64,000 bases of DNA from Gracilinanus agilis (taxonomy: Eukaryota), in NCBI RefSeq assembly GCF_016433145.1, contig NC_058135.1, positions 279,249,876 to 279,313,875 on the forward strand, given 5' to 3'. Each line of letters starts with the position of its first letter. The stretch's first letter is position 1. The notes under the pieces are model-generated. The model did not search any database. It had not been told where the DNA came from and was given only the letters and a program-made list of their open reading frames with translations. The position numbers and the translations under genes are program-made. Shown one piece after another: positions 22,995 to 46,320 of the stretch.

Positions 22995-23700
22995 CATCCC
23001 CTTACCACCTTCCAGTGTCTCTGAATCCTTCAGCCTTCTGAAGAAAAGCTCTTATTTGTAGTCTGCTATTGTCTTGAGATAACCCCATGCCCGTCTACAT
23101 GAAAACTTGATTATTCTCTCCCTTACCTTCTCCTTGGATTAAATGGGGTGAGGTTCCATGACTTTCAAAGGGCATACTAGAAAAATTTACTAGAAAAGAA
23201 AGACCTTGCCTAGTGGGTATTCTCCATTCCTTTACTCTCTGGATAGATCTTACATAGCTGAGGTGGAAAAAAAAAAGCTCTGGTATCCCTCTCTACCTGA
23301 GGGTCTTGGAGTAGAGATAGCTTTAGGATGCAGTGGCCATGGATATCATGGATACTTTCTTGATTGAGATTCAGAATGCTTCTCCAGTGTCAGGAAACCC
23401 AGCAAAGGTAATTCTTGTTGACTCCATTCATTCTAGTAATATTAGGTTATTTACTGCCTTCTCTGAGGCCTCTCATAGGAATGGGTCTCTGAAGCAGAGG
23501 GATTTGGGGAAAACTTTATGGATTGAGGACAACAAAGATAAAGCTAATGGACATTCAGATTTCTATAGGCTTGCTCAGTGTATATTCCATCTGGAGCCTG
23601 GGGACCAGTAGAAGGAAATCTTGCTCTCTCTATGTCATCACTTCTCTTCTTCCCTCCATCAGGGACTTAAGTTGGGTTCTAATGAATTTCTCCAGAGGAA
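22995..23700 (-). promoter_or_regulatory. Candidate OR10Q promoter and first exon (module Q1)
   Basis: Donor GTG|GTAAGG at 23005. TATA-like TAAATAAC (plus gttattta 23446). O/E-like tctcatagga at 23471. TAATGG at 23545. Homologous to 41960-42700 and 45580-46320. Confidence 0.6.
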
Positions 23701-24909
23701 AATGGCTACATTATAATTTTATACTAACTTATGAGGTGTGTGGCTGCAGGCTGGCAAGTTTCAGATTTCTCAAGTGAAAAAATAAGTAAAAAATTGTAAT
23801 GAAACAAAAATGACTTAAAGTATTCATCATATAGAAAGCATTGAACCAGATACTAAAGCTATAAGGAGAAAACAAAATACAGTGGCTTCCTTCAAGGAGC
23901 TCTTACTCTTTAAGGAATGGGAGAATAGAAGACTTATAAAGAGAAATATAAAAGGAAATGATAGTGTATGGAAAATATTCAATAAATGCGATTCAGAAAA
24001 AAATTGAGAAGACAGATTATACTCAGTTGAGGGCATTAAAAAAGGCTTTAGTGACTAGGTAGCATGTGATTAGGGCCTTGGAAAATGAAATTTAGCATTA
24101 ATCATAGCCCATATTTATGTAGCACTTTAGGGTTTGCAAAGCCCTGAAATATGTCACCTCATTTGGTCCCATCAGAGGCTTGTGATAATGGTGCTATTAT
24201 TATCTTATTTTTTATTGATGAAGACATTGAAGAAGAGTTAAGTGACTTGTGTAGATCACAGGTAGGAAGTGTCTGAGGGTGGATTTGAACTCAGGTCTTC
24301 CTGAATCCCCATCCAAGCCCTCTGTCCATTGGGCAGCCAAGTTGCCTTCCCTCACATATCTGGTTGATGTGCTTAATTTCCAGGAGCCTCAACACACTAG
24401 GGTAGGCAAGGAAAATTGTATTCTGGAATCCAGAAAGTCTAGATTTTAATTCTATGGTGACCCTCCCCCAAATAGGTGAGAAGCAGTCTTTGAATGAAAA
24501 ATAGGAGAATTTGGGAACCATAGGCAAGTGGGGAAATACTAGCACACAAACTCATCCCTTCATTCCCAGGACTAATTGTACTAATCAGGGTGCCAATTTA
24601 TCCCACACCAATGGCTGCAAAAAGTCTAGAATAAATAATATTTTAACTACAAAAACTACTTTCCAACAGAGAAAAAGTAAATATCACTAAATTGTCTCAA
24701 TGAGAAATTATGGTTATGGACTCCAAAATGTGGCAAAAATAAAGCTGAGAAAGAGAAGATTTATTGGGAAGAGTGCTGGGCCTGAAATCACATACTATAA
24801 ATTCAAATTCTACCTCTATCACTTTGTACTGGTGTGATCTTGGAAAATTCATATAATCTTTCCGTTTCCAAGTGTCCTCATATATAAAATAAAGGGGTTG
24901 GACTAGATC

Positions 24910-25200
24910 AGTAGTTCTCACAGTGTAGTTCAAAGAGGCTTAAGTCTTTCAGATTCTTTTAGGGGGTCCAAAAGGTCAAAATAATTTTCACGATAATTCT
25001 AAGCCATTTGAATTTCAAATATAGTCACTAACAATATCAACCCCCCTCTTTCTCCCTCCCTCCCTTCCTCCTGCTTTCTCTCTCTCCATCCCCATCCCAC
25101 AAGCACACACACACCCCACATAAACAAAAGTTTTTTTGGCTACTTCATAATTTTTAAGATGTTAAAGTGAGCTAGAAACCAAAAGTTTGATAACTGCTTG
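24910..25200. mobile_element. MER3/MER33-like hAT element (related copies at 45286-45500 and 63930-64000)
   Basis: cagtagttctcacagtgtagt...agggggtccaaaaggtcaaaataatttt...aaaagtttgataactg. Confidence 0.55.
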
Positions 25201-26559
25201 TCTATGATCTCCAAGGTCTCTTCCAACTCTATTACCAATAAGAACAGACTAGGGCCTGATGTCATTAAGTAATATTGATACAAAATATTAAGCAACATAA
25301 TGGAAAATTTACTATAATATAGGTAGAAATTATGCATTTTGATCAGTTGGAATTAATACCAGGAATACAAATATGAATCAAAGTTAGATAAACACTCAGA
25401 ATAATATAACATAATAATTAATAATAGTGAGATTTTTATATCATGCCTTAAGATATGCAAAATAGTTTTTGAGTAGTATCTTATTTTATCCTTAAAACTG
25501 CCAGAGGAGATAGAAACTCTTTATATCTCTGTTTTATAAATGAGAAAACTTTTGATGCTAACTGACTTGGCCCAGAATCACATAAGTAAATATTTGAGGC
25601 CAGATCTAAACTCAGATCTTCCTGACTTCAAGACTAGGACTTTATTGACTGTGACACTTTGCTGTGGATATTTGTTTAAAAATTAATACAAAAAGAATAA
25701 AATAAAAACAAAGAATATTATGAAAAGAATAATTATTTAAAGAATAAAACCAAAAAAAGTCTTAGAAAAAATATAACATTCATTTCTGTTTAAAAGAAAG
25801 AAAGGAAAATATCTAAGGATGGAAAGAATTTATTTGCAACTAGGAGAGAGCATTATATATAATGGAGAAGTATTAGAGCCTTTCTCACTAAGAACAGGGG
25901 TAAGGTAGAGGCTGTCTTATATCATGAGATTCTCAGAATGAAAAGAACTTCAAAAATCATCCATTCTAATCCATATTCAGAGGATGGAGTAGATAATCTC
26001 AAAGATCTCTTCTATCACTAATATGTTGACTCTAAGGTCTTTTTTACTTTAGGAGTATATGAAAGCTATGGAATTAAAATGTTTATTTAGATAGACATAC
26101 CTAGAACAAAACCATTAGACCAAAAATCAGAAATGAAGTACTTGTATTTTTCCACTGGTTAAATCAAGAAGGCAGATGAACCTGTAACTCAAAAACCTTA
26201 CTCAAAATGGGTACAAGCACATGTATGTATATATACACATACCTACATACACACATGTATGATATATACAAAATACACACAGATTCCAAAATATATGCTC
26301 ATGCATGAATACATACACCTTAAAGAAAAGTACAATTCTTTAAACTTCAGGACTCAGGTCAGAAAAAATGGTAATGAAACTTGGGAACTTGCTGAGGATC
26401 TTCACTTTCATTTCCTAGAAGTAATCTCTGCAATGAGAACTAGTCTCCCCTAAATCTCCTTTAGGTGTTCATTAGCTTCCTTCCCATAGATGATTTGGAG
26501 CACCTCTAGATGACTACTAAATTCAATTATCCCTGATCTGTCTTTTTGCTGTAGGTGTT

Positions 26560-26875
26560 CTCTTATAGTACTTCATGCCTGGAATCCTCTCCTTCCTCTG
26601 TTATGAGTATTCACCTCTCTGACTTTATTTAAGTCCCAAATAAAATACCATCATTAATAGGAAACTTTCTCCCACCTCTCTTAATTCTAGTGTCTTCCCT
26701 CTGTTAATCATTTTCTATTCATCCCATCTATTGCTTCCTTTGTATATATTTGTTTATTGTATCCCCTATTAGATTGTAAGCTTCATGAGGATAGGGACTG
26801 TCTTTTGCCTCTTTTTGTATACCTAGAGTTTATTGCTATATCTGGTACATAGTTGGGGCTTAATGCATATTTGTG
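26560..26875 (+). mobile_element. L2 3' end (paralog at 49880-50240)
   Basis: cctattagattgtaagcttcatgaggatagggactgtcttttgcc. Confidence 0.7.
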
Positions 26876-26956
26876 TGTCTGAAATGTGAAAATGTTTGAA
26901 AATCTCTCTCCTGATGTTCAACTTCCAATGACCAATCTCTTGTTGGACATTTCTAC

Positions 26957-27759
26957 TATAAGAATTAAATTTTAATGGTTGACTAAAATATATGAAAATT
27001 ATAGATAATATGGTAGTTGCCAATTCAAAGTATTATTGCTCAAAGTTGAAATGACCTTTAATAGCTTTTATTTACAAAAGAGGTATAAAGAGTGAAAGCA
27101 GAAAAATAACAAAAGGTAGAGAAGACATTAGCCTATCTAACTAAATATTGCTCCAATGCCCAACTCAGCTAGGACTTGTTGACCTTCAACCAAAAAACTT
27201 TCTCCAGAAGACAGGAAGGGGAAGCCAGCTATCCAATCACCCAAGTTCCCTCCAAGAGGCAGGTCAAGACAATGACTTGAGCTGAAGGTGATTCCTGACC
27301 CAACTTTCTTCTTTGAGCTGACCTTCTTCTTGAAGCTGACTTCCCTCTTGAAATCCAACTCCTTCTTAAAGCTGACTTCCTTCTTGGAGTTGACTTCTTT
27401 AGCCCCAGAAATTCAGGGACTTTTATAGTGGCTTCTTGTTTTCCAAATTGTCTAGCACTGCCCAGGGGGCAGTGTTTGTGAGAACCAGTTCTCACCTTCT
27501 GGAGGGGTGAATATTCATCAAAAGGGTTCACAGATTCCTGGCTGATTGAGTTTCTGAGGGTGCGAATTCACTAAGTGGTTTGCAAGCTCCTCCTCCTAGT
27601 TCAAGCTCATGTTGATTCAATCAAATGGTGAACAAAGGAGAGTTGATCCCGTCTTCACAAGATAGTGAGGTACTTAAGTTAGCTCCAACTAGGCAAAGAA
27701 AATAAAGGATTCCTTTTCACAAGTGTAAACTCAAAGAAAACAAAGAATTCCCTTTTACA
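26957..27759 (-). mobile_element. Solo LTR (ERV1-like)
   Basis: T(A)...CA ends, 4-bp TSD ctac/ctag, internal ~20-bp tandem repeat at 27315-27398. Empty site in unit B near 50290. Related to 51089-52012. Confidence 0.8.
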
Positions 27760-28364
27760 CTAGTAGTTGTCCTTGAGGCATCTCAAAAATTGTACATTCA
27801 GTTAACTGTCAAAACTTTTTTCTGTCTCCTCTTCTGCTCTAAGACAACAATCTTAAACCAAGCTATCATCAATCTTGTACTTCTGTAGTAGTCTCCTAAT
27901 CAGTCTCTTTTTCCCCCCATCTCTCCAATATGCCCTCTGTATTGCTATGAAATCCATGATGAAATCAATCTTCCAAATCCCAAATATGACACTGTCCCTT
28001 ATCTCCATGAGAATCTTTAGGGGACTCGATTCTCTCTATGAAAAACCACTTCATATTGGTATTGAAAATTCTGCATAATTTGGCTCCAGGTTATTCTTCT
28101 TCATACTTATTTGATGGAATGCCCCTTAATGTACTTACATTCCAGCCAACTTGTCCTATTTGCTATTCCCTGAGCTCAGCATTCAATATCTCACCGCTCT
28201 GCCTTTACCACAGCTGTTCCCTGTACTTATAATTCACTCTTCACTAACTTTTCCTTCCTGGGATTTAAAGCCTTCATTAAGGCTCTGCTTATTTCTCATA
28301 TTCTTTGAAAATCCTTTTCTGAACCTCTTAGTTTTCAGTGATTTCTCCTTACTCAAAGTTAGTA

Positions 28365-28800
28365 GGTTGTTGTCTGTCATACCTGAAGAGGACCAAAATA
28401 ACATCAGTATTGGTGATGTCTTTGATTCATACATAAATCAGACTTAAGTGAGTCAGAGTTCCTCAAAGTCACTGACCTCATCTCTCTTCCAGAGTCATTG
28501 AGGTCTAGAGTCTAGGCAAAAGTCAAGATGACTGGTGATGGCTCAGATTGCAGTGGATGACCTTGATTACTCTGATGTCTTTCCAACTCCACAGTACTTG
28601 CTTTGGCCACCTTCATAGCCACTGAAAGACATTGTTCTTATCTGCCCCTTCTACTGGGAAAAGTCTTCATATACCTAGGGTAGACACCCACTTAATTCAG
28701 AGAATTCATTGAAGGGTTGAGGCATGTTGGTTATCCTCCACCTGGTTTAATTCACCAGGCAAGATGATGGAGCCTCTTGGAGCCATAGGGGAGAGCTGGG
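28365..28800. mobile_element. RTE-related marsupial SINE (WALLSI-like), unit A only
   Basis: gttgttgtctgtc...gaagaggacca...gacttaagtgag...caaagtcactgacctc. Flanking caaagt duplication. Absent in unit B near 50900. Confidence 0.5.
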
Positions 28801-29676
28801 TTAAGATTATTCAAAGTAACATTCATTTACCTGTTTTCATATTGCATTTGCTAGTAGGATATAATAGCTTGTTTAAATTAAATTTCATCTAAAATAAAAT
28901 ACTTTTCATTGGAGTCATTGTGTTCTCAATATATAGCACAACACTTTGCATGTAGTAGGAGCTTAATAAATAAATGGTGGATTGAATTAAATAGCAAAGG
29001 GATAAACCCTTCTCACCCATTTATACCCACAGCTGTTCATATTCAAATACATTGAGGAGAAATATTAGGAGATTGCTATAGATTAAAGTAATCTAAATCA
29101 GAGATTTGTCCTTCATAGTCTGATATTGCTGAATTCCTTTTAATATCCAAAAGACTATAAGGACTGAAAGACAGGGACCATTTCTTATGTACTTGATCTA
29201 TACTAATCCCCACTGTTAGTAACAATGTTCTCTAACTTTGTTAGAACATAGAAATTTGTTTTGCACTTCATTAACATTAACACTTTGTATGCAATGTTCT
29301 CTGAAACTAATTTTGCATGACAGGATCCTTCTTGAAGTGCAAGGCTTAGGTAAATATGAGGGGCCACTACTTTTCTAACTTGTTTCTTCTCTACCGATGC
29401 ACTTCCTGCTTATAGCCTAGAAACTTCAGTATTTAATCCTTCCCAGAAGAGGGGTGGCAACAACTCCCCTCAGAAGCACACAAATTCACAAGGATTATGA
29501 GCAGGTCAAAAAAAAGCAAATTGTTCTCATCATTCTCATCAGAAAGTAATACTTTCAATACTTTTAACAAGTCTTCTATCAGGAGGCTGGGTAACAACAG
29601 ACACTTGGAGGTCATGCCTCTAAGGTGTCTCTTTAGTTGATATAATCTTGTGTGGTGCTTCCTATACCTAATGTTC

Positions 29677-30421
29677 TGAAGGAATGCAGGTAAGGGGTAG
29701 AGTAAATTTCACGGATTAGTTTAAAGAGGAAAAGAGAAGAATCTGGATACAAGCCCTGGGAGAGGATTCTGACAAGGAGAGAAGGATTGTGGGAGTTTCC
29801 TGGCATTAACTGACAATCATTCTGGGACTCCTGTTTGACTGAAGTAGAAGGAGGTTTTGCTCTGGCAAATTTCCCTTGGTAGTCTTAAATCTTGTGAAGA
29901 GATTAGGATTCCTTGGTTGAGAGTTTGCTTTGGAGTGGACTGCCTTTTCCCTGAGGTACAGAGACCATCTGCCTGTGATCCATCTGCCAAAAATCCACAT
30001 GATCGAGGTAATCCAAGTTATTGTTAACTGGAACTTTGGGTTATCTAGTGAAGCCAACCCTAGGCTTTAGGTAAGGGCTCAAATACACCTGCGAGTCCTT
30101 CCTTCCTCTTTGTCCTTTTTGTTAATCCATATAAATTAGGATAGGTATAGTCAGATTGCTTTGGGAGTATTAGTTAAGAGCAGGGAGTTGTAGGTAGGGG
30201 CCAGAGAAGACAAGAAGGCCATCCTCCTGTGAGATGCATAGAGGTTGGGTGGAGCCTAGATTTTAATAGTGTTAGGATCTTGCCTACCAGTTTCCCTCAC
30301 TCCAACCATCAAATAAACTTGGTTTTCTGTAGGCTAAGGGTTTTTGTGCTTTAATGGCCCTGAGGAGGTTCCTAGGTGGGTTTTATCATCTCTTATTCAT
30401 CTAGGAAGGATCCTTATTTCA
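29677..30421 (+). mobile_element. Solo LTR
   Basis: TGAA...TTCA ends, perfect 4-bp TSD gttc, AATAAA near 30312. Empty site in unit B near 52685. Confidence 0.85.
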
Positions 30422-31867
30422 GTTCTTTTCTAAGGACCCTCAGGTCACCTGGTTAGGGTGTAGACCTCCCAACACTTCCCCAGATGTTATCTTTTTTTTT
30501 TTTTCCTCTGGGTATTCTCTGGAGCATCAGAACTACTTGTGTCCTCATCCTAGGCAGTATTTCAGATGGGTAGCTGGCCTCCTGTATCTCTTTTGGCTGC
30601 AATGTTCAACAGAGTCAGCTTTTGATATCTCCTTCTCTTATGCTTCTAAAATCTTGTTACTCAGAAAAGTGCTCAGTGCTGTCAAGAAAATTCTACTTTC
30701 TACCTCAGCCTTTCTTGGAGCCCATGTTAACCTCTGTGAATTATGGACTTTGATCTCATGCTATTGTCCCTCAGGATCCTTGAATATAGACTGATGATAA
30801 AAATCTATTTAATGTATTTGGAGTATATATAGAGGAAACCAGGCTCTCCATTGATGGGGATTACATGGGTTGAAATTTGCAAGTTTTTCCCCTCCTTTCT
30901 CAAATTAATCTTGATTAAATTTTCTTGATCACTCCTTGACCCTATCACTACTCATTTTGTATGGTCATGCTGTTGGCCTCTTAGTTCAATGTAAGTTCAT
31001 TGAAGGCATGGACTTGCATTAAGAAATGAATACATTTGGTTTTATACTATAAGTAAAACCCAAATACCATGGTCATTGAGCTCTTCCTGGTAATATATAA
31101 AAAATAAACAAAACCTATCTCCCAAATAACTTTACCTTGCAGCAGAGACAACATTATGCTTCTGAGAGTCATTTTTTTCATCTTGATTCACCAACACCTA
31201 GATCAGTGCCTTACAAAGAGAAGAATCTTAATAAAAGGTTTTTTTCATGAATGATAATAGTAAATCTATGTTTCTGTATTTTTTCCATTATGACTATAAT
31301 CTCCACAAGGATAGCTTCTGTCTAATCTCTAAGTTTTTGAATCTGTTCTAGAGTTAGGCACTAGAAAATGCTTAAATGAGTTTTATACTTTAGAGTCTAG
31401 CCTAGTGCTTGGTCCTTAGAAAGTGTCCAATAAATACTTGTTAAATGAATGAGTGAATGAATGAAGACCTCTCCAAAAAACTCCTTTGAACTCTAGACAA
31501 ACCTTTCTTCCCAAAGCCTCTTTCCATGGATAACACCTGACATCAATGAGCCAAAGCTCTCTGGAACTCTCCTATATTTCTACATTGATAAAGTCATTTC
31601 TTCCCCATTATCTCATGTGAACATTAAATGAGAAAAAAGTGGATATAATGTGAGGAGAGTGATTCATGTGAGGAATAATTTCTGATTGGATAGAAAGAAG
31701 CCAGTTAGTAAGAAATTCAGGCCAACTATTCAACTAACCCTTCTGGCTTCAGGCTGACTTCACTGCTTCTGAGAAAAAGAATGTCAGTTAAGGACTTTCT
31801 CTGACAGTCTGAGCCTAACCTGAGGACATCTGTATATTTTCTCCTGAGTGCTATGGAAGAAGACTAG

Positions 31868-32704
31868 TGTTATATTCACAATCTGGGAAGTGATGGATGC
31901 CACCTTGAATGACAGGGATGGCAGTTGGAAGCCTTGAAATGTTCCCAGGTGCCATAAGCCAGGGGCAAACATCAGTTGGCCCCACAGTATACATACCCCT
32001 GACAGCCACTTTGTGGAGGTCTTTCTGGAGGTCTGGACAGGAGTCTCTGGACTGGGAAAAATCTGAGTGGTGGTTGAAGGTTGGCAGGGAGGTCTATGAA
32101 GAAGAGGGCAGGAATAACTCTGAAGCTATTTCCTGATAGACTGTGAGAGCTAGTGCATCATCAACACCGATAGTGAGAAAGCTGAGAGAATAAGATCATC
32201 AATACAGCTGCACCAATAGCTTCCCTGTTCTCTGGCTTGGCTGTGGCCAGGTCTGGCCAGAGGGAGTAGAAGTGAGCAAATCTCCAGCTCTCACTTGATC
32301 AATATCCTCCAGTCCTGATTGTCAACTAGTTTATAGATAATAGATCAATAGGGTCTCTAATCCCCAATCCTTATCCTTGTTATCCTTTTCCTAAGTATAG
32401 ATAAAGAGTGTTCAACAAGTACCTTCCTGAGTGGTTTATATCATGGCCCTAGGGAAGGGAGTCAAATGCAGTTAGATCCTAAACATCATCCAAGGCAAAT
32501 CAATAGCCCAATACTAATCTATCCAATCCCAGGTTAGACCTGGAAAGGTTACCCATCTATATAACCTCTCAAGGGTCCTTCTTGGGCAACTGTTAGAAAG
32601 AAAGGGATAAATTACAGCATCATCTGCAGTTGAGTAGAATACAGATAGATACAGCAACATCATTGTACATTTATACATCTCCTTTGGACCTTTTGTTTAT
32701 AACA
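31868..32704. mobile_element. Solo LTR
   Basis: Perfect terminal inverted repeat TGTTATA...TATAACA and perfect 4-bp TSD ctag. Absent from unit B. Confidence 0.85.
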
Positions 32705-33465
32705 CTAGATAAAATGTGTTTACAGTACCACCATCAACTTCCAACAAAAGACCACTGGAGATCTTAGACTTCCAGGGGAGGAATGAAAGCCAAAAACAGT
32801 CTTGATAATGGACACTATCAGTGGACTGAATTCTGCACTCTTGTCCCAATTCTCTTCTTATTTTCATATTTGTAGCCCAATTAAATATTTTGTGTAGCTG
32901 CGTGCACACACTAGTGCACATATATGTATGTAATTATATACAATGTGTGTCCATAAGCCCAAGTCATTGTATCCAACCTGATCCAGCTCTGGTAAAGGGG
33001 TCTGTACCATCACCTGACTACAGACAGTGTGAGTGCTCCTGTAGTCTTGGTACAACCTGAAATGCTGGACCGTAAAGATTGCTGTAGACAGTATCTTCAT
33101 AATCTTGCCAGAAATTCCGATGAGTGACTGCTCGACCCCTCACCTCAAGAGAACAGCACAAAGAAATAATTCTACCTGTGCCTCCACAATTCACTCTTTG
33201 TCTACCATCAGACTTTGGTAGAGTTTCTATGTTAGTAGAGCTTTATGTTTGTTGATGTTTATTTAAGCAATGAAAGCAATAAACCTGTAAGGAGTTTCAA
33301 TAAGTATACCCTAAAAATAACCAGTCCAGAATTGGCATTATATATTCTGATGAGCCGGAGCCTTCCCTTGCAGGGAGAACTGGAGTAGGGGTTTGGGAAA
33401 TGGAAACAGAAGTAGTTAGAATACTTCATGTTTGCATTATGGGGAGACCTTAATACCAAAGGGAG

Positions 33466-33674
33466 GGGCAGCTGGGTATCTCAGTGGATTGAGAACCAGG
33501 CCTAGAGACAGGAGGTCCTAGGTTCAAATCTTGCCTCAGATACTTCCAAGCTGTGTGATCCTGGGCAAGTCACTTGACCCCCATTGCCTAGCCCTTACCA
33601 CTCTTCTGCCTTGGAACCAATACACAGTATTGATTCCAAGATGGAAGGTAAGAGTTTTTAAAAAATTAAAAAAC
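33466..33674 (+). mobile_element. SINE1_Mdo-like SINE
   Basis: TSD aataccaaaggga. Confidence 0.9.
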
Positions 33675-34052
33675 AATACCAAAGGGACTCCATCAAACTA
33701 TCTTACCTGGCATAATGGAATTAATCTTGAAGTCAGGAACTTTGCTTCTGGTACTAACTCTTTGACACTTACAATTGGTGTATTTAAGATTATGTTTGCC
33801 ATAGATTGGGATATTAATAAAAAATACTATCAAACTGTAAACTATTGGCTAAACTTAAAACAAAACCCCAGTGAACTAAATTTCTCTCTTCAATGCAGGA
33901 GCTGTCAGTAAATTCCATTAGAATCTAAATTCCTTTAAGGCAGGGACTATGAAAAAAATTTTTTTTACATCTCCAATAATTAGCACAATATCCATCATAT
34001 ACAAAGCATGTAGCAAATGCTTTTTAAATTGAATGATTCTGAGCAGGTCTGG

Positions 34053-35000
34053 TTATCTGGTACTGGTCACGACTTTTTTCAGAGCATTTTTGACATCCTT
34101 GTTCCGAAGGGTATAAATAATGGGATTGAGCAGAGGGGTGACAAAGGTATAGACCAAAGCAAGTAGCTTATCCTCATCCTCTGTGGAGCTTGATGGAGGA
34201 CGGAAGTAGACCAAACTGCAGCAGCCATATTGTATCAGGACCACAGTGAGATGGGAAGAGCAGGTGGAGAAGGCCCTCTGGCGGCCCTCAGCTGAGCGAA
34301 TATGCAAGATGGTGTTGGTGATGAAGACATAGGTGATAGAGATAAGCAGAAACGGGATGGTCAAGAGAAAGATGCTCACCACATAGACTACAGCCTGGGG
34401 AATGCGGGTGTCAGCACAGGCCAGTCTTAGGACAGGTGGCACATCACAGAAGAAGTGTTTAATCACCCTATGGTACCCACAGAAGGGCAAGGTAAAGACC
34501 AGTGCTGTGAGATTCAGGGCAAGAAAAAGAGCCAGGCATAGACAGCCAGCCACCATCTGGATACAAAGCTTCTGGGTCATGATGAGAGTATAGTGCAAGG
34601 GATGGCAGATGGCCACATAGCGGTCATATGCCATGACAGCCAGTAGGAAACAGTCAGTGCCCCCAAGGGTGACAAAAAAGAACATTTGGATCCCACAGCC
34701 AGCCAGCGAGATGGGTTTCCGGTTATCAAAGATGTTGGAGAGCATCAATGGTACCAGAGTAGTGGTGTAACAGATCTCCAGGAAGGACAGGTTGGACAGG
34801 AAGAAGTACATGGGGGTGTGTAAGGAACTATGGGTGAACACAACCCAGACAATGGCAGTATTCCCACAAAGAATCATCACATAGAGAAAGAAAAAGAAAC
34901 AGAAGAGGAGGGCCTGGAACTTTGGGGTAGCAGAAAACACTTGGAACACAAATTCAATGGGGCCAGATTGGTTGAGCTGGAGAATATTAGGAGAAGACAT
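34053..35000 (-). CDS. OR10Q1-like: Olfactory receptor, OR10Q-family paralog, intact (315 aa)
   Basis: Full 7TM OR ORF with all hallmark motifs. Close paralog of 55914-56861. Confidence 0.92.
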   Translation of the reverse strand: MSSPNILQLNQSGPIEFVFQVFSATPKFQALLFCFFFFLYVMILCGNTAIVWVVFTHSSLHTPMYFFLSNLSFLEICYTTTLVPLMLSNIFDNRKPISLAGCGIQMFFFVTLGGTDCFLLAVMAYDRYVAICHPLHYTLIMTQKLCIQMVAGCLCLALFLALNLTALVFTLPFCGYHRVIKHFFCDVPPVLRLACADTRIPQAVVYVVSIFLLTIPFLLISITYVFITNTILHIRSAEGRQRAFSTCSSHLTVVLIQYGCCSLVYFRPPSSSTEDEDKLLALVYTFVTPLLNPIIYTLRNKDVKNALKKVVTSTR

Positions 35001-35022
35001 CTCTCACCTGACAAAAAAAATG
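35001..35022 (-). promoter_or_regulatory. Splice acceptor of second OR10Q coding exon (cAG|GTGAGAG ATG)
   Basis: ttttttttgtcag at 35009-35008, 7 nt before ATG. Confidence 0.75.
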
Positions 35023-35599: not shown

Positions 35600-36840
35600 G
35601 CCCTTAAGTAATTTTTTTAATAATACAATGAAAAGAAAAATGTCACCAAAGCAGATAAACAATTTTAAAAAATCCAATATTGTATCTGATGTTCTACTCC
35701 AGTACATCCCCTATCACTGCACAGAAATAGAAGGTAGTGCCCTTTCACATCTCTTATTTGGAGCCAAGCTTGTGTTTCTGTTTTTATTTTAATTTTATAG
35801 CATTTAGTTCTTGTTGTTTTGTGATTTTAGAGTTCTCCATTTACATTGTTTATGCCTCTCTTCTCTCTGCTTACTTCACTTTACATTGGGTAATGTCAGA
35901 CTTTCTGTGCCTTTCTTTGTCATCTCGTGATTTCATATTCTACATTATATTTCACTACATTTATGCATCATGATGTGTTTAGCCTTTCTCCAAACCATGA
36001 ACATCTATTTTGTTTGTAGCTTTTCCTACCAAAAAAGTGCTGCTATAAATATTTTAAATCTTTCTTTTTGACTTCCTTGGGGTAATAGTGAAATCCCTGG
36101 GCAAAAGGTATTGCTGTTTTCATAATTTTTTTTGTATAATCCCAAATAGCTTTCCAGAATAGTTGCACAACCAATAATGAATCAATTGCCCTATCTTACC
36201 ACAATTCTTCCAACAAGGACTCATTCTCATCTTTTCTTATCTTTTTTTCCAATTTGGTGGTTGTATGTTGAAATCTCAGAATTTTTGGATTTGTGTTTCT
36301 CATATTATTGGTGGTTTGTAGCATTATTTTAGATGATGGTTGACAATTTATTTTTTTTCTTAGAGGGCTATTTGTTCAGGTAGTTTGATCAATTATTTTC
36401 TGGGGAGTGGTTTTTAGTTTCATATATTTCTACTACTTCTTTATAAATCTTATATACCAGCCTTTTGTTAGATGAATCTGTACATTTTTCATTTTTATTG
36501 ATGTTTAAGAAAATAGCTACTTTCTTACTTTTCTGATAGAGAAGCCTTAGTAGAAGTTACCAAAAGAATGTCTGGAATAACATTCTAAGAGATCTTTGAG
36601 CATGATACAGGACCTGGAAGGTACATTAGAGAATACCTCCTATGAGAGGCTGGTCTATAATATATCAATTAAATCTCTGATCAGAGATCTTTGATACAAA
36701 TAATTTCCTAAGTCATCCATTTTCCTTCTTATCCTAGATGTTTTACTTTTATTTGGACAAAAGCATTTTAATTTTGCATACTATATTTTTCTATTTTTTC
36801 TTTTGTAATTGCTTCTGTCTCCTAATTAGTCAATCCATCC
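35600..36840 (-). mobile_element. Old L1 3' fragment (paralog at about 57690-58500)
   Basis: gctgctataaatattt, tagctttccagaatagttg, tttgttcaggtagtttgatc: antisense L1 ORF2-end motifs. Confidence 0.7.
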
Positions 36841-36847
36841 TCTAAAC

Positions 36848-37039
36848 CAGTGATTCCCAAAGTGGGCACCACTGCCCCCTGGTGGGTGCTGCAGCAATCC
36901 AGGAGAGCAGTGATGGCCACAGGTGCATTTATCTTTCCTATTAATTGCTATTAAGATTTAAAAAAATAATTTCCAGGGGGCCAAGTAATATTTTTTTCTG
37001 GAAAGGGGGCGGTAGGCCAAAAAAGTTTTGGAACCACTG
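36848..37039. mobile_element. hAT MITE (192 bp)
   Basis: TIRs cagtgattcccaaa/tttggaaccactg. Perfect 8-bp TSD ctctaaac. Confidence 0.92.
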
Positions 37040-37279
37040 CTCTAAACATAGTCACCCCAAATATATGGTCTACTTGTTTTCTATTTTTATGGTGTGGTCT
37101 TTAATACTCAGATCACATATTCATTTTGAACTTGTGGAATATGGCTTAAGATGTTCTTCTAAGTCTATTTCTTGGTCATTTTCCATTTTTTCCCATGAGT
37201 TACTAACAAATAAAGAGTTCTTTCCTATGTAATTTATGTCTCCAGGCTTATCAAATACACTATATTTTATCTTCCTTAG

Positions 37280-38157
37280 TGTACTTCCAACCAGTATTAT
37301 AGAGAGCCAGCTCTATAATACCAGGGATACTGAGTGGCGTTTAATGGTGTCAGATTGAAATAGTATAGAAATTGAGAACAGTCAGTCTAATGGTTAGCTC
37401 CTAACTGCTCCAACATGCCATGGAGTCTAGAGTTTATTATATACTATTTTCACACAAAGAACACAAAGAAAAACTTTATAGCTTGTAGAGATTACAAATT
37501 ATACAAAAGAAAATCCTTTGAGGCTTCAAAGTAAAGATAGAACAGGGTCCAAGGCCGAATTCTAGCCACCTGGATATCAGTAAGCAAATTCCGAGAATAG
37601 TAACTATATTCTATAGATATATAAATGATTTGAGTCTTGTACTTTTTATCAGGAGGACTGCACCTGGTTGGATAAAGTTTTGTCTAGTTCTGGCCTTGGC
37701 TGACTTAGGATAGTCTTAGAGTTCAGTGATCTTCATTTTCTTGGAGAGAAATTGTTTACCCAGTAATTGCTGGTTTGCTTAAAGCTTTCCATTGGGACTT
37801 GGATCATAAAAGGAGTCAAAAGAAGAGTTTCAGATTTTTACCTTAGATAACCCATTCTGTCTGCATCCTGACATGTAATGCAGAAAAATCATACACACAG
37901 TTTTACTTGCTGATGATTTTATAATGGGATCCAGATAAAATATCTATCACAGATTTTTATTTCTTTTAATGACTTCCAATTTGCCTCCTGGAGGGGTCAA
38001 ATTGTTTTTTGGATTAACCAACCTGTTGGTACCAGAGCTTTTCAGGGCTTAGGATACCAGGACCAAACACAAAGACTGCTTCAGCCTGGTTTGTTCACGT
38101 AGGGAATCCAGATAAAAGGCCCTATCATGACCCTATTTCTCCATTTGGATTTCCACA
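37280..38157 (-). mobile_element. ERV 3' LTR (about 880 bp) preceded by polypurine tract
   Basis: Minus strand AAAAGAAAAAGGGGGAAATA|TGTGGAA at 38177-38157. AATAAA at 37438-37433. Ends CA at 37280, where homology to unit B host sequence resumes. Confidence 0.7.
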
Positions 38158-38301
38158 TATTTCCCCCTTTTTCTTTTAAATTGAAGTGGTTAAAATTTTT
38201 TTTTTATTAATTAGAGGAGTTATAGAGAGTGGTCATAGCTATCAGCTATAGAGAGTTTACAAACTACAGCAGGTTCTGATGGGATTCATAGATTATGGTA
38301 G

Positions 38302-40850: not shown

Positions 40851-41639
40851 GAAAAGAATAGCAGATGAATCCTTGGTAAAACCAATCTCATACACATTTC
40901 ACTGTGAATGAATGTCATTCCTTTCGTGTTGAGTCACTATAGACTTCTACTGAAATGAGAATATCCCACAATCTGAGTATTTGAAGGGACCACAGAGACC
41001 ATCAAGTCCTGTACAAGAATATCTCTTACAATGTGACCAACACGTGATCATACAACTATTGTTTATAAGTTTTTCCCCAACTCCTGATATCACCCATTCT
41101 ACTTGGGATTGCTCTAATTGTGAGAAAGCTTTTCCCTGCATGGAATTGAAATAGTATCCACTCCATCTTCTTTGTTCTTTCTTCTAGAACCAAGCAGAAA
41201 ATTCAAATTCCTTGCTACATGGAAGCCCTTAAAATACTTGATGGTAGCTAACATGCATCTCTTTAAATTTTACAAATGTTAAAAAAAACATATCAATAAG
41301 AATTAGAAATCTTGGAGTTTGAGTCTGTAATTTGTTAGCAAAGTATATCCCTACTCTACCTGAGGCTTATTTCTTTTTTTTTCATCAGCAATATAAGGAA
41401 GCTAGAAAAGATGACCTCTCCTAACCCTAAATCCCATGGTCCATTGATATTTTATTCAACTATTAATACCAGGGATGATGGATAGGAATTATACTTTACT
41501 GGTAACCAACTTGGGCATTGAGGACACACCTAGGGGAAATATTTACCTGTTAGGACAAGGAGTGAATAAGACTGTAGCACAAATGGTGAAAGTAAAAACA
41601 TGTGGACTGATATAAAATCACCTCATCAAGTGCCCAGTA

Positions 41640-41915
41640 GAAGGCTTTGCTTGCCAAGAAAATAAAGAAGACTGGAGGAGAAGTGATGGCTGCCTTTTAA
41701 TATCTGAAGGGCAGATAGATGGAAGAGGAATTTGATTTGTTCTGTTTGGTCCCAGGAAAGAACAAGGTGGCATGGGTAGAAGTTGTGAGGTTGCAGATTT
41801 AACTTGATGAAAGAAAATAAAACAAACATCAATAATGAGTACTGTTCCCAAATGGAATAGACGTTCTGAGTTTGAAATCACTGGAGATATCTAAATCAAG
41901 GAGAGGTTGGACAGG
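41640..41915 (+). mobile_element. CR1/L3 3' fragment (antisense piece also at about 40945-41300)
   Basis: gccttttaatatctgaagggc...gatttgttctgtttggtcccagg...cactggagatatct. Confidence 0.7.
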
Positions 41916-41959
41916 TCCCAATCTCAGGACTCAAGTCAAACAGGGAAAAGGAAGAAAAT

Positions 41960-42700
41960 GTCACCCTCTTACCACATTTCAGTGTTTTTGAGTCCATTAG
42001 CTCTCTGAGGAAAAATTCTGATCCATTGTCTACCTTTCCCTGAAGATGCCCTTGGGGCAAACCTCCTAGGGAGCTATCCACAACTCTCTTATCTCTTCTC
42101 ACTTTGAATCACTTGGAATGAGTGCCCATGACCTTCAGCTGGGATATGGTCTCCTAAATGGAAAGACATTGACCTATGGGAAGGATTCTTGCTTGTGCTC
42201 TCTGTCTGAACCTCATGCAGCTGAAAGTGAGAAGAATCTTTGGTTCCTACTACTATCAAGGGATTTGAGAAGGCAATACTTTGGAGGTACTCTTGTCAGG
42301 AGTATCAAGAAGTTGTCATAGCCTTAGGTTCAAGGTAACCTGCTAGGATTAAAAAATCCATCAAGATCTGTCCCTGATGTCTCCATTCCTAATATACTTA
42401 TGTCTCATTTAATAGGTTTGGTTATTTAGTTCTGTCTTTGCAGGCTTCCTCAAGGTAATGGATTTCTGAAGCACTGGGGTTTGGGAAAAACTTTTAGAGT
42501 GGAGGACAAGAAAGACAAAGTTAATGGATGGTCAGATCCTGTTGGGTTTTCTAGTTGAAGAACACTTATGTTGTATAGGGGACTAGTGGGTGGGAAACTT
42601 ATTCTCCTGCCCTATCTCCCATTAGAAACAACCATATTCTGACAAATCATGCCATTATGAAATGGTAAGGATTTAAATTTATAACATTTTAGTCACAAAA
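41960..42700 (-). promoter_or_regulatory. Candidate OR10Q promoter and first exon (module Q2)
   Basis: Donor GTG|GTAAGA at 41972. gttattta at 42421. tcctcaaggt/TAATGG at 42447-42461. TAATGG at 42522. Confidence 0.55.
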
Positions 42701-43930
42701 AGGTTGAGATGTCCTGAGAAAAATCTGGAATGGAGAGTCAAGAGACTTGGATGCTAGTCCAAGCTACAATAGTCTTTTTCTCTCATTGGCACTTCCTAGT
42801 ACTCACTCTTACCAATAACTTGAACCTTGCGTTGCAAGAAAAACTGTTCATTAAAATGGACTTCTCATTCCTATCCAAAAAACCGAAAACTTTTCTGAGA
42901 GTTTGTGCAATATTCTGCATCTCCAGGGACTGGCCCATTTTGACTTTTTCTTGAGTGTTAAATGAAAGACTTTACAAATAGCAGATATTTAGTAAGTATC
43001 GGTTGATGAATGAATGAATGCTAACTATCACTATTAACTCCCATCCTTGGTATTATCCTTGATTCTTCTTTCTTCCCACATTTCCAAACTGTTGCCGAGT
43101 CTTGATAATTCGACCTTTACACTATGTTTCCTATAAATTCTCCCCTTTCCACTCACTCAGCCACCATGCTTGCTCAGGCCCTTATACCTATAGGTTTGGA
43201 CTAATGCAATAGCTTGCTGCTAGATCTCATTACCTCCATTCTTCTCCCACTCATATTCATCCTCCATTCAGCTTCCAAAATGATTTTCATAAAGGTACAG
43301 ACCTTATTCTTTCTGGTACAAAATACTGTGGCTTTTAAAAGCCATTAATTTCCTAATTCATTATCATCTTGCCCTCCCAGTCTTCTTATACTTATCCTCT
43401 TTCACATTATAGTTGAAGAAATGGAGGCAGATGGAGGTTAAATGACTTGCCCATGGCCATACAGCTAGTAAATATTTAAGACTGAATTTGAATTTTTGTC
43501 ATCCTGACACCAGGTTCAGTTCTCTATCTGTTCTGCCATCCAGCTGCTCTATGGAGTAGGCTCCATATTCCTAATAGTTCTTGGATCTCCTGACCTATAC
43601 CCCTTCTAGATGTATGACGAAAAAGCAGCAGGATTTTCCAAACCTATGATTCCTGGCATGTAGGAAGAGTTTGAAGAATAGTTGTTGAATGGAATTGGCT
43701 TGAATGATGCTTCATTGCAACAAATGCCATTAAGAATCAATACATTTTACTTTATAAGTAAAGCCAAGTACCATAGATATTGAGCTCTTCTTTATAATAA
43801 GGAAAAAATAAGCAAAAACTATCCCTCAAACCATTTTATTAGACAACATAGGCAACATATTGTGATTCTGGCACTCTTGTTTGTTTTTTTATCTTATAGA
43901 ATTAAATTTTATATAATTTATTTATTATAN

Positions 43931-44018
43931 TGGGCAAGTCACTTGACCCCCATTGCCCACCCTTACCACTCTTCCACCTATGAGACAATACACCGAAGTA
44001 CAAGGGTTAAAAAAAAAA
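43931..44018 (+). mobile_element. SINE1_Mdo-like 3' half after single-N junction
   Basis: tgggcaagtcacttgacccccattgcccacc...aagggttaaaaa. Confidence 0.8.
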
Positions 44019-44467
44019 TGGAGTTAGGAAGACCATATAGGAGGCTATTGCAATAGCCCAAGTGAGAGATGGTATATTCTTAAATTAGAGCAGAGAATGA
44101 AGGGAAGATATTACAAGGAGTGAGAACTTATGAGAACTTGCCAACAGATAATATATAGAAGTCAAAGGTAGAGGGAAAAGTCAAGAAAAATGATAAAATG
44201 GCAAGTCTGGACTAATAGAAGAAAAGTGATACTTTCAACAGATGTTGAGAAGTTTGTAGTTTTATACAATTAAAATATTGAAAAGGCTGGTTTGGGGACA
44301 AGAACATCAATTTATTGCTTAGGCTATCATATATATATAAATATATATAATTTATATAATTTATATAATTTTATGTCATTTTTATTTATATCATTTAATT
44401 TTTAATGCTCAATGCATTAAAAAGAGTAGATATTTAATAAACTGTTTATTTTATCAATGAATGATAG

Positions 44468-44670
44468 TGGGGGCAGCTAGGTGACTCAGTGAATTGAGAG
44501 CCAGGCCCAGAGACTGGAGGTCCTAGGTTCATATCTGGTCTCAGACACTTCCTTGCTGTGTGACCCTGGGCAAGTCACTTAACCTCCAGTGCCTAGCTCT
44601 TACTGCTTTTCTTCCTTGGAACCATTACACAGTATTGATTCGAAGACGGAAGGTAAGGGCTTTATTTTAA
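44468..44670 (+). mobile_element. SINE1_Mdo-like SINE (same insertion site as 53701-53905)
   Basis: Identical 5' flank aatgaatgatagtg. 3' TSD missing here. Confidence 0.88.
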
Positions 44671-45579
44671 AAGAAAAGAATCAAATACAAGATTCTGAAC
44701 TAGTTCTAGATGTCAGGTTATACTTGTTAAGTATAATGAGGTTTTTGTTTTAGATAATCTGAAAGACAGTTGCCACCTCTCATAAGTCTCTGAAATGTAT
44801 GATCCCTCCTACCTAAAGACCAGGAGATAGGACAACCGATAAAAATTTTACAATGATTCCAGAAAAGCTTAATATAGTGAAAAGAGTCCTAGATTTGCAG
44901 TCAAAGGATATTAGGTTCAATCTCAAACTTTCTTGGGCAGTTCATTATGGAATTACAGATTTATAGTTGAAAGGTAGCTTTGAGGCCCTCTGGCTCAACC
45001 CATTTCATTTAAACAAATAGAAAACTGAGGCTTACAGTAGCTATGTGACCTAGGATTATAGGAACATTGATCTAGAGCCAGAAGACACCTCAGAGACCAT
45101 CTAGTCAAGCATTCTCATTTTAAAGATGAGAAGCTTGAGCCCAGTGAAAAGAAATTATTTTCTCAGTTACCCAGGCAGTAAAATATTAGATGATGGATTC
45201 AAACCGAGGGCCTCTGACTATGAAGTTCAATTCTCTTTTATGGACCTCAGTTTTCTTTTCAGCAAAATAAGTGGGGGGACTAGACCAGTAGCTTTCAAAG
45301 TGTGGTCTGGTGATCCCTAGGTTTCCTTAAAACCTTCTTAGGGGATCTGCAAGGTTCATAATATTTTCATGCTATTGCTAAGGCATCTTAATTTTTAATG
45401 TGTTAAATACTGATAACTACAACTGACCTGAATAAAAACTCTTTGGGGTTCTTAATAATTTTATTTAAGAGTATAAGGGGGTCCTATGAAAACCACTAGA
45501 GTAACTGAACTCTAAGATGCTTCCAACTCTAAATCCTTGGCTATCTATTCAAGAAGTTTAATGAAAATAAATAAATGAC

Positions 45580-46320
45580 ATTCCTTACCACCATACAGTG
45601 GTTCTGATTCCATCAGCCATTTAGGAAAAATCTTCGTTCCACAGGCTGCCTTCGACTTGAGATGTCCCAGGGATAGTACTTCTGGAAATCTTTGCAATTC
45701 TGTCCTTGTTCTTGTTGAGTTAAGTAGAAAGAGGGTCCATGACCTTGAAAGGGGACAGAGTTTCCTTTAAAGGAGACACCTGAGCTGGTGCATGGGCTCC
45801 CTGGCTCTGCTTTCTGGATGGAATTCATTCAGCTGCAAATAGGGAAAGATTTGAGTATCTTATGTTCACTGACGGCCTTCAAGGGCAGATGATTTGAGAG
45901 TGATGATCATCACAGAATCTTCTTAGACTGTGGTCCAGGATGTATCCCCTGAGTCAGGTAACCTAGCTACCTGACATAGTCCCTCTGTGTTCATTGATAA
46001 GCTAGACATTATCTTCTTATCCAGGTTATTTAAGGTCCTCTTTGGGATCTTTCTCAGGGGAATGAGTCAATGAAGCATTGCAGTTTTCCCCATTGCTGTA
46101 TTTAAGTTGATCTGAGGTTTGGGGAAAACATTCTGAATTGAGGACAACAAAGACAAAGCTAATGGGCAGTCCCATCCTCTTGGGTTTTCTAGGTAGAGGC
46201 CACTGCTGGTCTATGGGGACCAGGAGGAGACAAGTTTGCTTACTCCTCATCAGAGACTTATGTTGTGTCCCAATAATTCTCTCCAGTGGGAAATGATAAA
46301 GACACCCATTTACAGAACCT
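45580..46320 (-). promoter_or_regulatory. Candidate OR10Q promoter and first exon (module Q3)
   Basis: Donor GTG|GTAAGG at 45588. gttattta at 46025. O/E-like tctcagggga at 46052. TAATGG at 46160. Confidence 0.55.

What the first reader, a model, noticed from the sequence alone, without database searches (positions are those of the whole stretch)
22995..46320. Three copies of an OR10Q promoter/first-exon module for two genes
Seen: a ~700-bp non-repeat module occurs at 22995-23700, 41960-42700 and 45580-46320. Each keeps a minus-strand splice donor (GTG|GTAAG), a TAAATAAC TATA-like box 437-449 bp upstream of the donor, an O/E-like site 25-27 bp beyond it, and a TAATGG homeodomain site in the conserved string aggacaa.aaaga.aaag.taatgg. 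Known: OR promoters use juxtaposed homeodomain (Lhx2/Emx2) and O/E (EBF) sites, and adding such sites raises OR choice frequency. Inference: the 34-35 kb gene has two stacked promoters (promoter dosage), or one module is an orphan left by a deleted OR10Q gene.
Basis: partly seen in the sequence, partly recalled or inferred. Interest (0 to 1): 0.72.

Follow-up and report, generated by a model that had tools for sequence, protein, structure and literature searches.

The report
Duplicated promoter/first-exon module of OR10Q genes
Three old copies of the promoter plus non-coding first exon of a smell-receptor gene family sit upstream of tandem receptor genes in an opossum, and one gene has two in a row; this is ordinary receptor-gene architecture with one extra first exon whose use is untested.

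Summary
Exactly three homologous ~765-bp modules lie on the minus strand at 22971-23738 (Q1), 41938-42698 (Q2) and 45560-46329 (Q3). All keep the GTG|GTAAG donor, a TAAATAACC box, and a 26-nt block with a TAAT core. Only Q3 has a good O/E-like site.

The window (Gracilinanus agilis) holds three OR10Q1-like genes, not two: g2 at 15219-16181, g3 at 34053-35000 and g4 at 55914-56861.

The modules look like the family's promoter plus non-coding exon 1:
- Conservation peaks at the promoter core and at the donor.
- CpG is nearly absent.
- The last 25 nt of each exon match the 10-residue N-terminal extension annotated in three RefSeq paralogues of two species.

Q1 serves g2. Both Q2 and Q3 lie upstream of g3. 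The intron flank of Q3 is colinear with the start of g4's intron, so Q3 is probably g3's original first exon and g4's own module lies just past the window end. Q2 is an equally old extra copy.

No RNA data could be obtained, so "two stacked promoters" is untested. A lost gene has only circumstantial support. The scan noted a duplicated non-coding OR first exon elsewhere in this genome. Verdict: known kind, moderate to low interest.

The parts
22971..23738 (-). Module Q1: putative promoter plus non-coding exon 1 of g2. It lies 6.8 kb upstream of the g2 acceptor.
   Evidence: Profile hit; alignment A1.
41938..42698 (-). Module Q2: surplus, anciently diverged copy, 7.0 kb upstream of the g3 acceptor and inside the interval from Q3 to g3.
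   Evidence: A palindromic element (41088-41866) sits just on its intron side. It has no flank homology to the other units.
45560..46329 (-). Module Q3: 10.6 kb upstream of the g3 acceptor. It is the positional counterpart of g4's off-window module.
23525..23550 (-). Conserved 26-nt homeodomain-type block of Q1 (CCATTA is TAATGG on the + strand). The Q2 copy is at 42502-42527 and the Q3 copy at 46140-46165.
   Evidence: 3 matches, 0.00 expected.
23446..23453 (-). TAAATAAC (TATA-like, invariant TAAATAACC) of Q1. Q2 has it at 42421-42428 and Q3 at 46025-46032.
   Evidence: A role as TATA box is inferred; the TSS is unknown.
46052..46061 (-). O/E-like TCCCCTGAGA of Q3 (1 mismatch). A second site lies at 46282-46291. 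The aligned sites in Q1 (23471-23480) and Q2 (42448-42457) have 2 and 3 mismatches.
23001..23008 (-). Donor GTG|GTAAG of Q1; the exon ends at 23006. Q2 has it at 41968-41975 (exon ends 41973) and Q3 at 45584-45591 (exon ends 45589).
45589..45613 (-). Last 25 nt of the Q3 exon: ATG plus 7 codons plus 1 nt (MESEPLYG). Q2 at 41973-41997 reads MDSKTLKC. Q1 at 23006-23030 reads KDSETLEG and has no ATG.
   Evidence: Homologous to the N-terminal extensions MESEAFNGGG, MESETLDGGD and MESDALEDDE of RefSeq paralogues P0049, P0014 and P0111.
23139..23159 (-). Conserved 6-codon uORF (invariant GTCATGG, stop in the same column) in Q1. Q2 has it at 42109-42129 and Q3 at 45720-45740.
15219..16181 (-). g2, the OR10Q1 orthologue (320 aa). 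Acceptor TAG at 16187-16189, then 5 nt (GTGAG) before the ATG.
34053..35000 (-). g3, OR10Q1-like (315 aa). Acceptor CAG at 35008-35010, then 7 nt (GTGAGAG) before the ATG.
55914..56861 (-). g4, OR10Q1-like (315 aa). Acceptor CAG at 56869-56871, then 7 nt before the ATG. Its own module is not in the window.
44816..45354 (+). Intron flank of Q3, homologous to 63487-64000. The match is cut off by the window end.
   Evidence: E 1e-62; 68.6% identity.
43725..44737 (+). Copy, 85-93% identical, of g4's 3' flank 53458-53957, including a SINE that unit X lacks at that position. It is interrupted by a 507-bp insert (43899-44405) that holds the single N at 43930.

Best explanation
**What the modules are.** The three modules are paralogous copies of the OR10Q family's proximal promoter plus non-coding exon 1.

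**How they would work (inferred).**
- An olfactory neuron that chooses the gene starts transcription downstream of the conserved core, which holds the TAAT-type block and the TAAATAACC box. In Q3 the core also holds O/E-like sites.
- The transcript runs through a uORF-rich leader.
- It then splices from GTG|GTAAG to the YAG acceptor that lies 5 nt (g2) or 7 nt (g3, g4) before the receptor ATG.

**Which module serves which gene.**
- Q1 serves g2.
- g3 has two modules in series on its strand with no coding exon between them.
- Q3 is its original first exon, because it is colinear with g4's intron start.
- Q2 is an equally old extra copy lying inside what is the Q3-to-g3 intron.
- Either module, if active, would give the same receptor protein with a different leader. 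They would be alternative first exons and promoters.

**Shown versus inferred.**
- Shown: homology, motif and donor retention, uneven conservation, colinearity, and exon homology to annotated paralogues.
- Inferred: the TSS, actual splicing, and activity of Q2 and Q3.
For: **Copies and position.** There are exactly three copies, all on the gene strand, 6.8, 7.0 and 10.6 kb upstream of acceptors that are conserved in g2, g3 and g4.

**Conservation.**
- It peaks at the core (70-85% pairwise) and the donor (65-77%). The exon body is at 45-60%.
- Invariant runs are clustered (P=0.0004).
- Each lineage, Q2 and Q3 included, has about half as many private changes in core plus donor as elsewhere. Odds ratios are 0.36, 0.39 and 0.52, with P of 1e-4, 2e-4 and 0.011.
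- Q2 (25/145) and Q3 (25/145) are no more decayed than Q1 (21/141), the sole module of g2.

**Composition.** GC is 40-43% and CpG observed/expected is 0.00-0.08. This fits the AT-rich, CpG-island-free OR promoters with O/E, homeodomain and TATA enrichment described in PMC3247239.

**Exon end.** It is 8 codons plus 1 nt in all three modules. It is homologous to the 10-aa extension of RefSeq models of paralogues in G. agilis and Dromiciops. The same donor-to-acceptor join is therefore modelled in sister genes.

**Colinearity.** The Q3 flank 44816-45354 matches 63487-64000 (E 1e-62), at the divergence seen in the g3/g4 unit duplication (73% in aligned non-coding blocks).

**No coding remnant.** No OR coding remnant lies between Q2 and Q3.

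**Literature.** 5' non-coding exons, several isoforms and TSSs, and uORF-rich leaders are usual for OR genes (PMC4154679; PMC4627058).
Against: - There is no RNA, CAGE or chromatin evidence.
- The private change rate in core plus donor (0.15-0.17) equals the minimum neutral expectation since the g3/g4 duplication. Recent loss of function of Q2 or Q3 therefore cannot be excluded.
- O/E-like sites are poor in Q1 and Q2.
- Each putative 445-nt exon has 8-10 ATGs, which is the chance level. The true TSS may lie nearer the donor.
- The ATG at the exon end of Q2 and Q3 would open a roughly 50-codon frame overlapping the g3 start out of frame. That would lower translation.
- The mouse Or10q1 upstream 10 kb shows no convincing match.
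- The RefSeq model of g3 uses neither module.
Confidence: 0.55

Rival explanations
1. One of Q2 or Q3 is a dead or dying orphan. It would be the promoter and first exon of an OR10Q gene that was deleted, or that was never copied with it. It would contribute nothing to g3 expression.
For: - An 85-93% identical copy of about 500 bp of g4's 3' flank lies between Q2 and Q3. It includes a SINE that unit X lacks at that position. It sits in the order expected for a unit that lost its coding exon: 3' flank piece, then intron flank, then Q3.
- Monodelphis has two g4-type proteins (XP_001376796.3 and XP_001376812.2, 96.5% identical). G. agilis has only g4 in that 90% cluster.
- Private change rates do not exclude neutrality over the last tens of millions of years.
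- Q2 lacks a good O/E-like site.
Against: - No coding remnant survives anywhere outside the four ORFs.
- Q3's intron flank is 69% identical to g4's, not 90%. The recent copy and Q3 therefore do not come from one recent unit.
- Q2 and Q3 keep the donor, core block, TAAATAACC and uORF as well as Q1 does.
- The Monodelphis pair may be a Monodelphis-only duplication. g4 is 96.2% identical to one protein and 93.7% to the other.
- Even an orphan in this position would splice to g3's acceptor.
Confidence: 0.3
2. The surplus module is an assembly artefact. A collapsed or misjoined tandem array around the N at 43930 would hide a gene between Q2 and Q3.
For: - A single N sits at 43930, between Q2 and Q3.
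- A SINE fragment is cut exactly at that N.
- A second gap, with a rearranged mitochondrial insert, lies in g4's intron.
Against: - The sequence on either side of the 507-bp insert that holds the N (43725-43898 and 44406-44737) matches one contiguous 500-bp source, 53458-53957. The N therefore sits inside a local insertion, not between two distant units.
- Q2 and Q3 are about 57% identical, so they cannot be collapsed copies of each other.
Confidence: 0.07
3. The module is an interspersed repeat or other non-promoter sequence that happens to lie near OR genes.
For: - No repeat library could be consulted.
- No match was found in mouse.
- The O/E evidence is weak.
Against: - There are only three copies in 64 kb, while the local SINE has more than ten.
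- All copies lie on the gene strand at matching distances from acceptors.
- The exon end is homologous to annotated coding extensions of paralogues in two marsupial orders.
- The conservation pattern fits a promoter plus donor.
Confidence: 0.04

Closest known systems
Class II mammalian OR gene proximal promoter with non-coding 5' exon (O/E, homeodomain and TATA type; Young et al. 2011, PMC3247239; gene models in Ibarra-Soria et al. 2014, PMC4154679)
   Same: - An upstream non-coding exon spliced to an acceptor just before the ATG.
- AT-rich, CpG-poor sequence.
- A TAAT-core site and a TATA-like box; O/E-like sites in Q3.
- Several possible first exons for one gene.
   Different: - The TSS and factor binding are not shown here.
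- O/E-like sites are weak in Q1 and Q2.
- The putative exon 1 (about 415 nt from the box) is long.
- Two full promoter-plus-exon copies of ancient origin lie in series upstream of one gene.
Duplicated non-coding first exon of an OR gene noted elsewhere in this genome by this scan (s1-153945), and family-wide OR promoter cassettes (s1-181971, s1-170993)
   Same: - A conserved promoter plus exon-1 unit shared by tandem OR paralogues.
- An old extra copy inside the first intron.
   Different: - Those notes concern other OR families and shorter units.
- Here the extra copy is full length (about 760 bp) and keeps all the conserved elements.
- Those notes were not re-tested here.
[quoted passage not shown] 2020, PMC7055050)
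   Same: - The end of exon 1 carries an ATG-led mini-frame, 8 codons plus 1 nt.
- In RefSeq models of paralogues (P0049, P0014, P0111) this frame reads in phase into the receptor.
   Different: - In g3 and g4 the 7-nt leader (GTGAGAG, with an in-frame TGA) puts that ATG out of frame.
- In Q1 the ATG is AAG.
- The three genes of this window are therefore not split-ORF genes.
Engineered multimerised homeodomain sites that raise OR choice probability (Vassalli 2011 and D'Hulst 2016; recalled from memory, not read here)
   Same: The idea that extra copies of choice-relevant sites upstream of one OR raise its representation.
   Different: - Those are short multimerised sites next to one promoter.
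- Here there are two whole promoters 3.6 kb apart.
- No expression data exist for this locus.

Membership tests
OR proximal promoter plus non-coding exon 1 | Lies upstream of an OR coding exon, on the same strand, within a few kb. | tested here: met
   The modules lie 6.8, 7.0 and 10.6 kb upstream of g2 and g3, all on the minus strand.
OR proximal promoter plus non-coding exon 1 | The exon ends in a donor that pairs with an acceptor just before the ATG. | tested here: inconclusive
   The donor GTG|GTAAG and the acceptors YAG|GTGAG(AG)ATG are present and conserved. The homologous join is used in RefSeq models of paralogues. No reads were available.
OR proximal promoter plus non-coding exon 1 | A homeodomain (TAAT) site near the TSS. 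| tested here: met
   A conserved 26-nt block with CCATTA/TAATGG lies 97-133 nt upstream of the TATA-like box. Binding was not tested.
OR proximal promoter plus non-coding exon 1 | An O/E (EBF) site, TCCCNNGGGA-like. | tested here: inconclusive
   Q3 has two sites with 1 mismatch, against about 0.3 expected. Q1 and Q2 have none within 1 mismatch.
OR proximal promoter plus non-coding exon 1 | AT-rich sequence with no CpG island. | tested here: met
   GC is 40-43% and CpG observed/expected is 0.00-0.08. Compare PMC3247239.
OR proximal promoter plus non-coding exon 1 | A mapped TSS and expression in olfactory neurons. | not testable with these tools
Interspersed repeat | Many dispersed copies, either orientation, unrelated to gene position. 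| tested here: not met
   There are three copies, all in one orientation and at matching positions. Only the window was tested; no repeat library was available.
OR enhancer (Greek-island type) | A composite homeodomain plus O/E motif in tight fixed spacing, not followed by an exon. | tested here: not met
   The TAAT block and the O/E-like site are 70-105 nt apart, and the unit ends in a donor. The definition is recalled from memory.
Split-ORF OR gene | The start codon lies in the upstream exon, in frame with the receptor ORF. | tested here: not met
   For g3 and g4, 1 nt plus 7 nt puts the upstream ATG out of frame, and an in-frame TGA lies before the ATG. Q1 has AAG in place of ATG.

The most novel reading that the evidence does not exclude
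g3 is driven by two independently choosable, anciently retained promoters in series. This would raise the share of olfactory neurons that choose it, a natural case of promoter dosage. The stacked arrangement may predate the g3/g4 duplication. If so, the counterpart in g4 would be hidden at the gap and mitochondrial insert at about 60.3-61.3 kb.
Probability: 0.15. Interest if true: 0.6.

Novelty: new member of a known kind. Interest (0 to 1): 0.3.

Why it matters
- If both modules are active, this locus is a natural test of whether extra promoter copies change how often an odorant receptor gene is chosen. That question has so far been addressed mainly with transgenes.
- It gives marsupial OR10Q genes a proper gene model: a non-coding exon 1 lying 7-10 kb upstream. 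It also flags a dubious RefSeq model of g3.
- It shows how unit duplication can leave surplus first exons.
- As it stands, it is ordinary OR gene architecture.

Tried and rejected
- **Orthologous and neighbouring DNA.** The look-up of encoding contigs returned no DNA for G. agilis, Monodelphis, Petaurus or Vombatus because the files are too large. Neither Q4 nor other marsupial loci could be read.
- **Metagenome scan.** A scan for the 26-nt core block gave 0 hits.
- **Mouse Or10q1 locus.**
  - L001 is a JGI contaminant contig whose protein is 100% identical to the mouse protein, so I take it for mouse and not human.
  - It gave only an 8.7-bit profile hit at L001:1230-1340.
  - Single-module queries gave nothing. 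I treat this as inconclusive.
- **Coding remnants.** tblastn for OR remnants between Q2 and Q3 found none.
- **Q2 as a recent copy of Q3.** Rejected: the pair is 57% identical and the three-way tree is star-like.
- **Q1 and Q3 as duplicates of the same age as the g3/g4 spacers.**
  - Rejected as a simple statement: 60% identity against 73%.
  - The distal part of the module is closest between Q1 and Q3. Unequal crossing-over within modules therefore remains possible.
- **N positions.** They were neither filled nor looked up.

Full report
**Setting**

The window comes from the agile gracile opossum. The g4 protein is on record only in GCA_016433145.1, and RefSeq proteins of Gracilinanus agilis match the window's ORFs.

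Four minus-strand ORFs carry the 7tm_4 olfactory-receptor domain:
- g1 at 1047-2081
- g2 at 15219-16181
- g3 at 34053-35000
- g4 at 55914-56861

g2, g3 and g4 are OR10Q1-like and 77-87% identical as proteins. g1 is a more distant receptor, about 55% identical.

In a protein tree:
- g2 is the conserved OR10Q1 orthologue, 97% identical to Monodelphis.
- g3 groups with its Monodelphis orthologue (95%) and with Australidelphian orthologues, to the exclusion of g4 (support 100/99).
- The g3/g4 duplication is therefore older than the split of the living marsupial orders.

**The observation**

A three-way alignment and a profile search show exactly three homologous modules. All are on the minus strand: 22971-23738 (Q1), 41938-42698 (Q2) and 45560-46329 (Q3). 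No fourth copy appears anywhere in the window, not even upstream of g1 or in the 7.1 kb of g4's intron that the window holds.

- GTGGTAAG donors
- TAAATAAC boxes 437-449 nt from the donors
- a 26-nt block with a TAAT core that matches three times against zero expected

The weak point is the O/E-like site. The aligned decamer has 2, 3 and 1 mismatches to TCCCNNGGGA in Q1, Q2 and Q3. Only Q3 has sites within one mismatch: two sites, against about 0.3 expected.

**Is it more than neutral duplication?**

Overall identity is only 55-60%, but it is very uneven.
- The core around the TAAT block and the TAAATAACC box reaches 70-85%.
- The last 80 nt before the donor reach 65-77%.
- The exon body is near the level that forced alignment of unrelated AT-rich DNA gives.
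- Invariant runs of 6 nt or more number nine against 2.7 expected (P=0.0004). They are GTCCCCA, CCATTA, TTGTCCTC, CCCAAA, TGCTTCA, TGAGAG, TAAATAACCT, GTCATGG and GTGGTAAG.

On a three-branch star tree, each lineage has about half as many private changes in core plus donor as in the rest. Odds ratios are 0.36, 0.39 and 0.52. Q2 and Q3 are as well kept as Q1, which is the only module g2 has.

There is a limit to this test. The absolute private rate, about 0.15-0.17, equals the least that neutral decay since the g3/g4 duplication would give, because non-coding blocks of the two units are 73% identical. Loss of function in the last tens of millions of years cannot be seen with three sequences.

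**Evidence that the unit is an exon with a used donor**

All three genes keep a pyrimidine tract and YAG directly before GTGAG(AG)ATG.

The last 25 nt of each module exon form 8 codons plus 1 nt before G|GTAAG:
- Q1 reads KDSETLEG.
- Q2 reads MDSKTLKC.
- Q3 reads MESEPLYG.

Three RefSeq models of other OR10Q-like genes carry a 10-residue N-terminal extension of the same shape:
- G. agilis P0049: MESEAFNGGG-M
- Dromiciops P0014: MESETLDGGD-M
- Dromiciops P0111: MESDALEDDE-M

That shape is exactly 8 codons plus 1 nt, then 5 nt, then the ATG. The same exon end and the same join are therefore modelled in sister genes of two marsupial orders. This also argues against an interspersed repeat.

In this window the mini-frame is not coding.
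- g3 and g4 have 7 nt rather than 5 before the ATG, with an in-frame TGA.
- The ATG of Q2 or Q3 would open a frame of about 50 codons that overlaps the receptor start out of phase.
- Q1 has AAG instead of ATG.

I counted frames on each exon separately.

A second feature is a 6-codon uORF with an invariant GTCATGG and a stop in the same column in all three modules. uORF-rich leaders, 5' non-coding exons and several isoforms or TSSs are usual for OR genes (PMC4627058; PMC4154679; PMC7055050). The modules have 40-43% GC and almost no CpG, as described for OR promoters (PMC3247239).

**Which module belongs to which gene?**

Self-comparison shows an old tandem unit duplication. The stretch 24093-37280 is colinear with 48032-58425, at 73% identity in aligned non-coding blocks.

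The 540 bp on the intron side of Q3 (44816-45354) match 63487-64000 (E 1e-62, 68.6%). That match is cut off by the window end. Two inferences follow:
- g4's own module should lie just past the window, with its donor near 64,235.
- Q3 is the positional counterpart of that module, which makes it the original first exon of g3.

Q1 belongs to g2. Part of g2's intron (21233-21871) is still faintly homologous to g4's intron (62635-63281).

Q2 is the surplus copy.
- It is about equally distant from Q1 and Q3. Star-like Jukes-Cantor branch lengths over the whole module are 0.28, 0.35 and 0.26.
- It is therefore not a recent copy of Q3.
- It has no flank homology to any other unit. A palindromic element at 41088-41866 sits just on its intron side.
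- By weak colinearity (43046-43357 with 61820-62129, E 0.008), its counterpart in g4's intron would fall at about 60.7-61.5 kb.
- That is where the mitochondrial insert and the N gap lie.
- Whether the ancestral unit already had two modules therefore cannot be told.

**The deleted-gene idea**

Between Q2 and Q3 lies an 85-93% identical copy (43725-43898 and 44406-44737) of g4's 3' flank 53458-53957. It includes a SINE that the older paralogous unit lacks at that position. A 507-bp insert that holds the single N at 43930 interrupts the copy. Both sides of that insert match one contiguous source, so the N does not look like a place where a whole gene is hidden.

Monodelphis has two g4-type proteins that are 96.5% identical to each other. 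G. agilis has one in that cluster. This fits a g4-like copy once present here and later lost.

It fits other histories equally well:
- a Monodelphis-only duplication together with an unrelated small ectopic copy;
- no coding remnant survives;
- Q3's own flank is at the old divergence level, not at 90%.

Origin and use are in any case separate questions. Whatever its origin, a module on this strand upstream of g3 would splice to g3's acceptor.

**What could not be done**

- DNA of other marsupial assemblies, and of the window's continuation, was not obtainable.
- A metagenome scan for the core block found nothing.
- The mouse Or10q1 locus gave only an 8.7-bit hit, and nothing with single modules. 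It is held on a JGI contig that I take for mouse, because its protein is 100% identical to the mouse protein.

**Verdict**

The modules are real and are best read as the OR10Q family's promoter plus non-coding first exon. The window holds three such genes. g3 has a surplus, old, well-kept copy, so alternative first exons are the most likely present state. Their activity is untested.

This is a known kind of OR gene architecture. The scan has noted a duplicated non-coding OR first exon elsewhere in this genome (s1-153945). The promoter-dosage reading is possible but unsupported.

Noticed in passing
window 43233-43267 (-), 36200-36220 (-): The RefSeq model of g3 (XP_044537891.1, 325 aa) starts at an ATG at 43267, between Q2 and Q3. 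It adds a 7-residue mini-exon at 36220-36200 and enters the receptor ORF at an internal acceptor after codon 8. It uses neither module and replaces the conserved N-terminus, so it is probably an ab initio artefact.
   Followed up: partly
window 43725-44737 and 53458-53957: An 85-93% identical ectopic copy of about 500 bp of g4's 3' flank, SINE included, lies in the Q2-Q3 interval. It is split by a 507-bp insert that holds the single N at 43930, and a SINE fragment is cut exactly at that N.
   Followed up: partly
window 16182-16189, 35001-35010, 56862-56871: The leader between the acceptor and the ATG is 5 nt (GTGAG) in g2 but 7 nt (GTGAGAG, with an in-frame TGA) in g3 and g4. In paralogues with 5 nt, the exon-1 mini-frame MES(E/D)... 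reads into the receptor. The 2-nt difference breaks that frame in g3 and g4.
   Followed up: partly
window 41088-41866: A palindromic element (self-inverted match 41155-41866 with 41778-41088) has relatives at 18574-19063 in g2's intron. It is probably a DNA-transposon-like insertion, 72 bp from Q2's intron-side edge.
   Followed up: no
window 8097-8239, 43142-43288, 46943-47038, 61973-62129: A weakly similar element of about 100-150 bp occurs in four places on the + strand. In three of them it lies upstream of a module or in an OR intron. It may be an old repeat or a remnant of unit homology.
   Followed up: no
protein clusters: Monodelphis carries two g4-type genes (XP_001376796.3 and XP_001376812.2). 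G. agilis has one. An OR10Q clade with members in Monodelphis and Australidelphians (P0108 and relatives) had no G. agilis member among the 120 best hits.
   Followed up: partly
window 60171-60273 and 61553-61658: An inverted repeat (about 73% identical) brackets the mitochondrial insert and the N gap in g4's intron.
   Followed up: no
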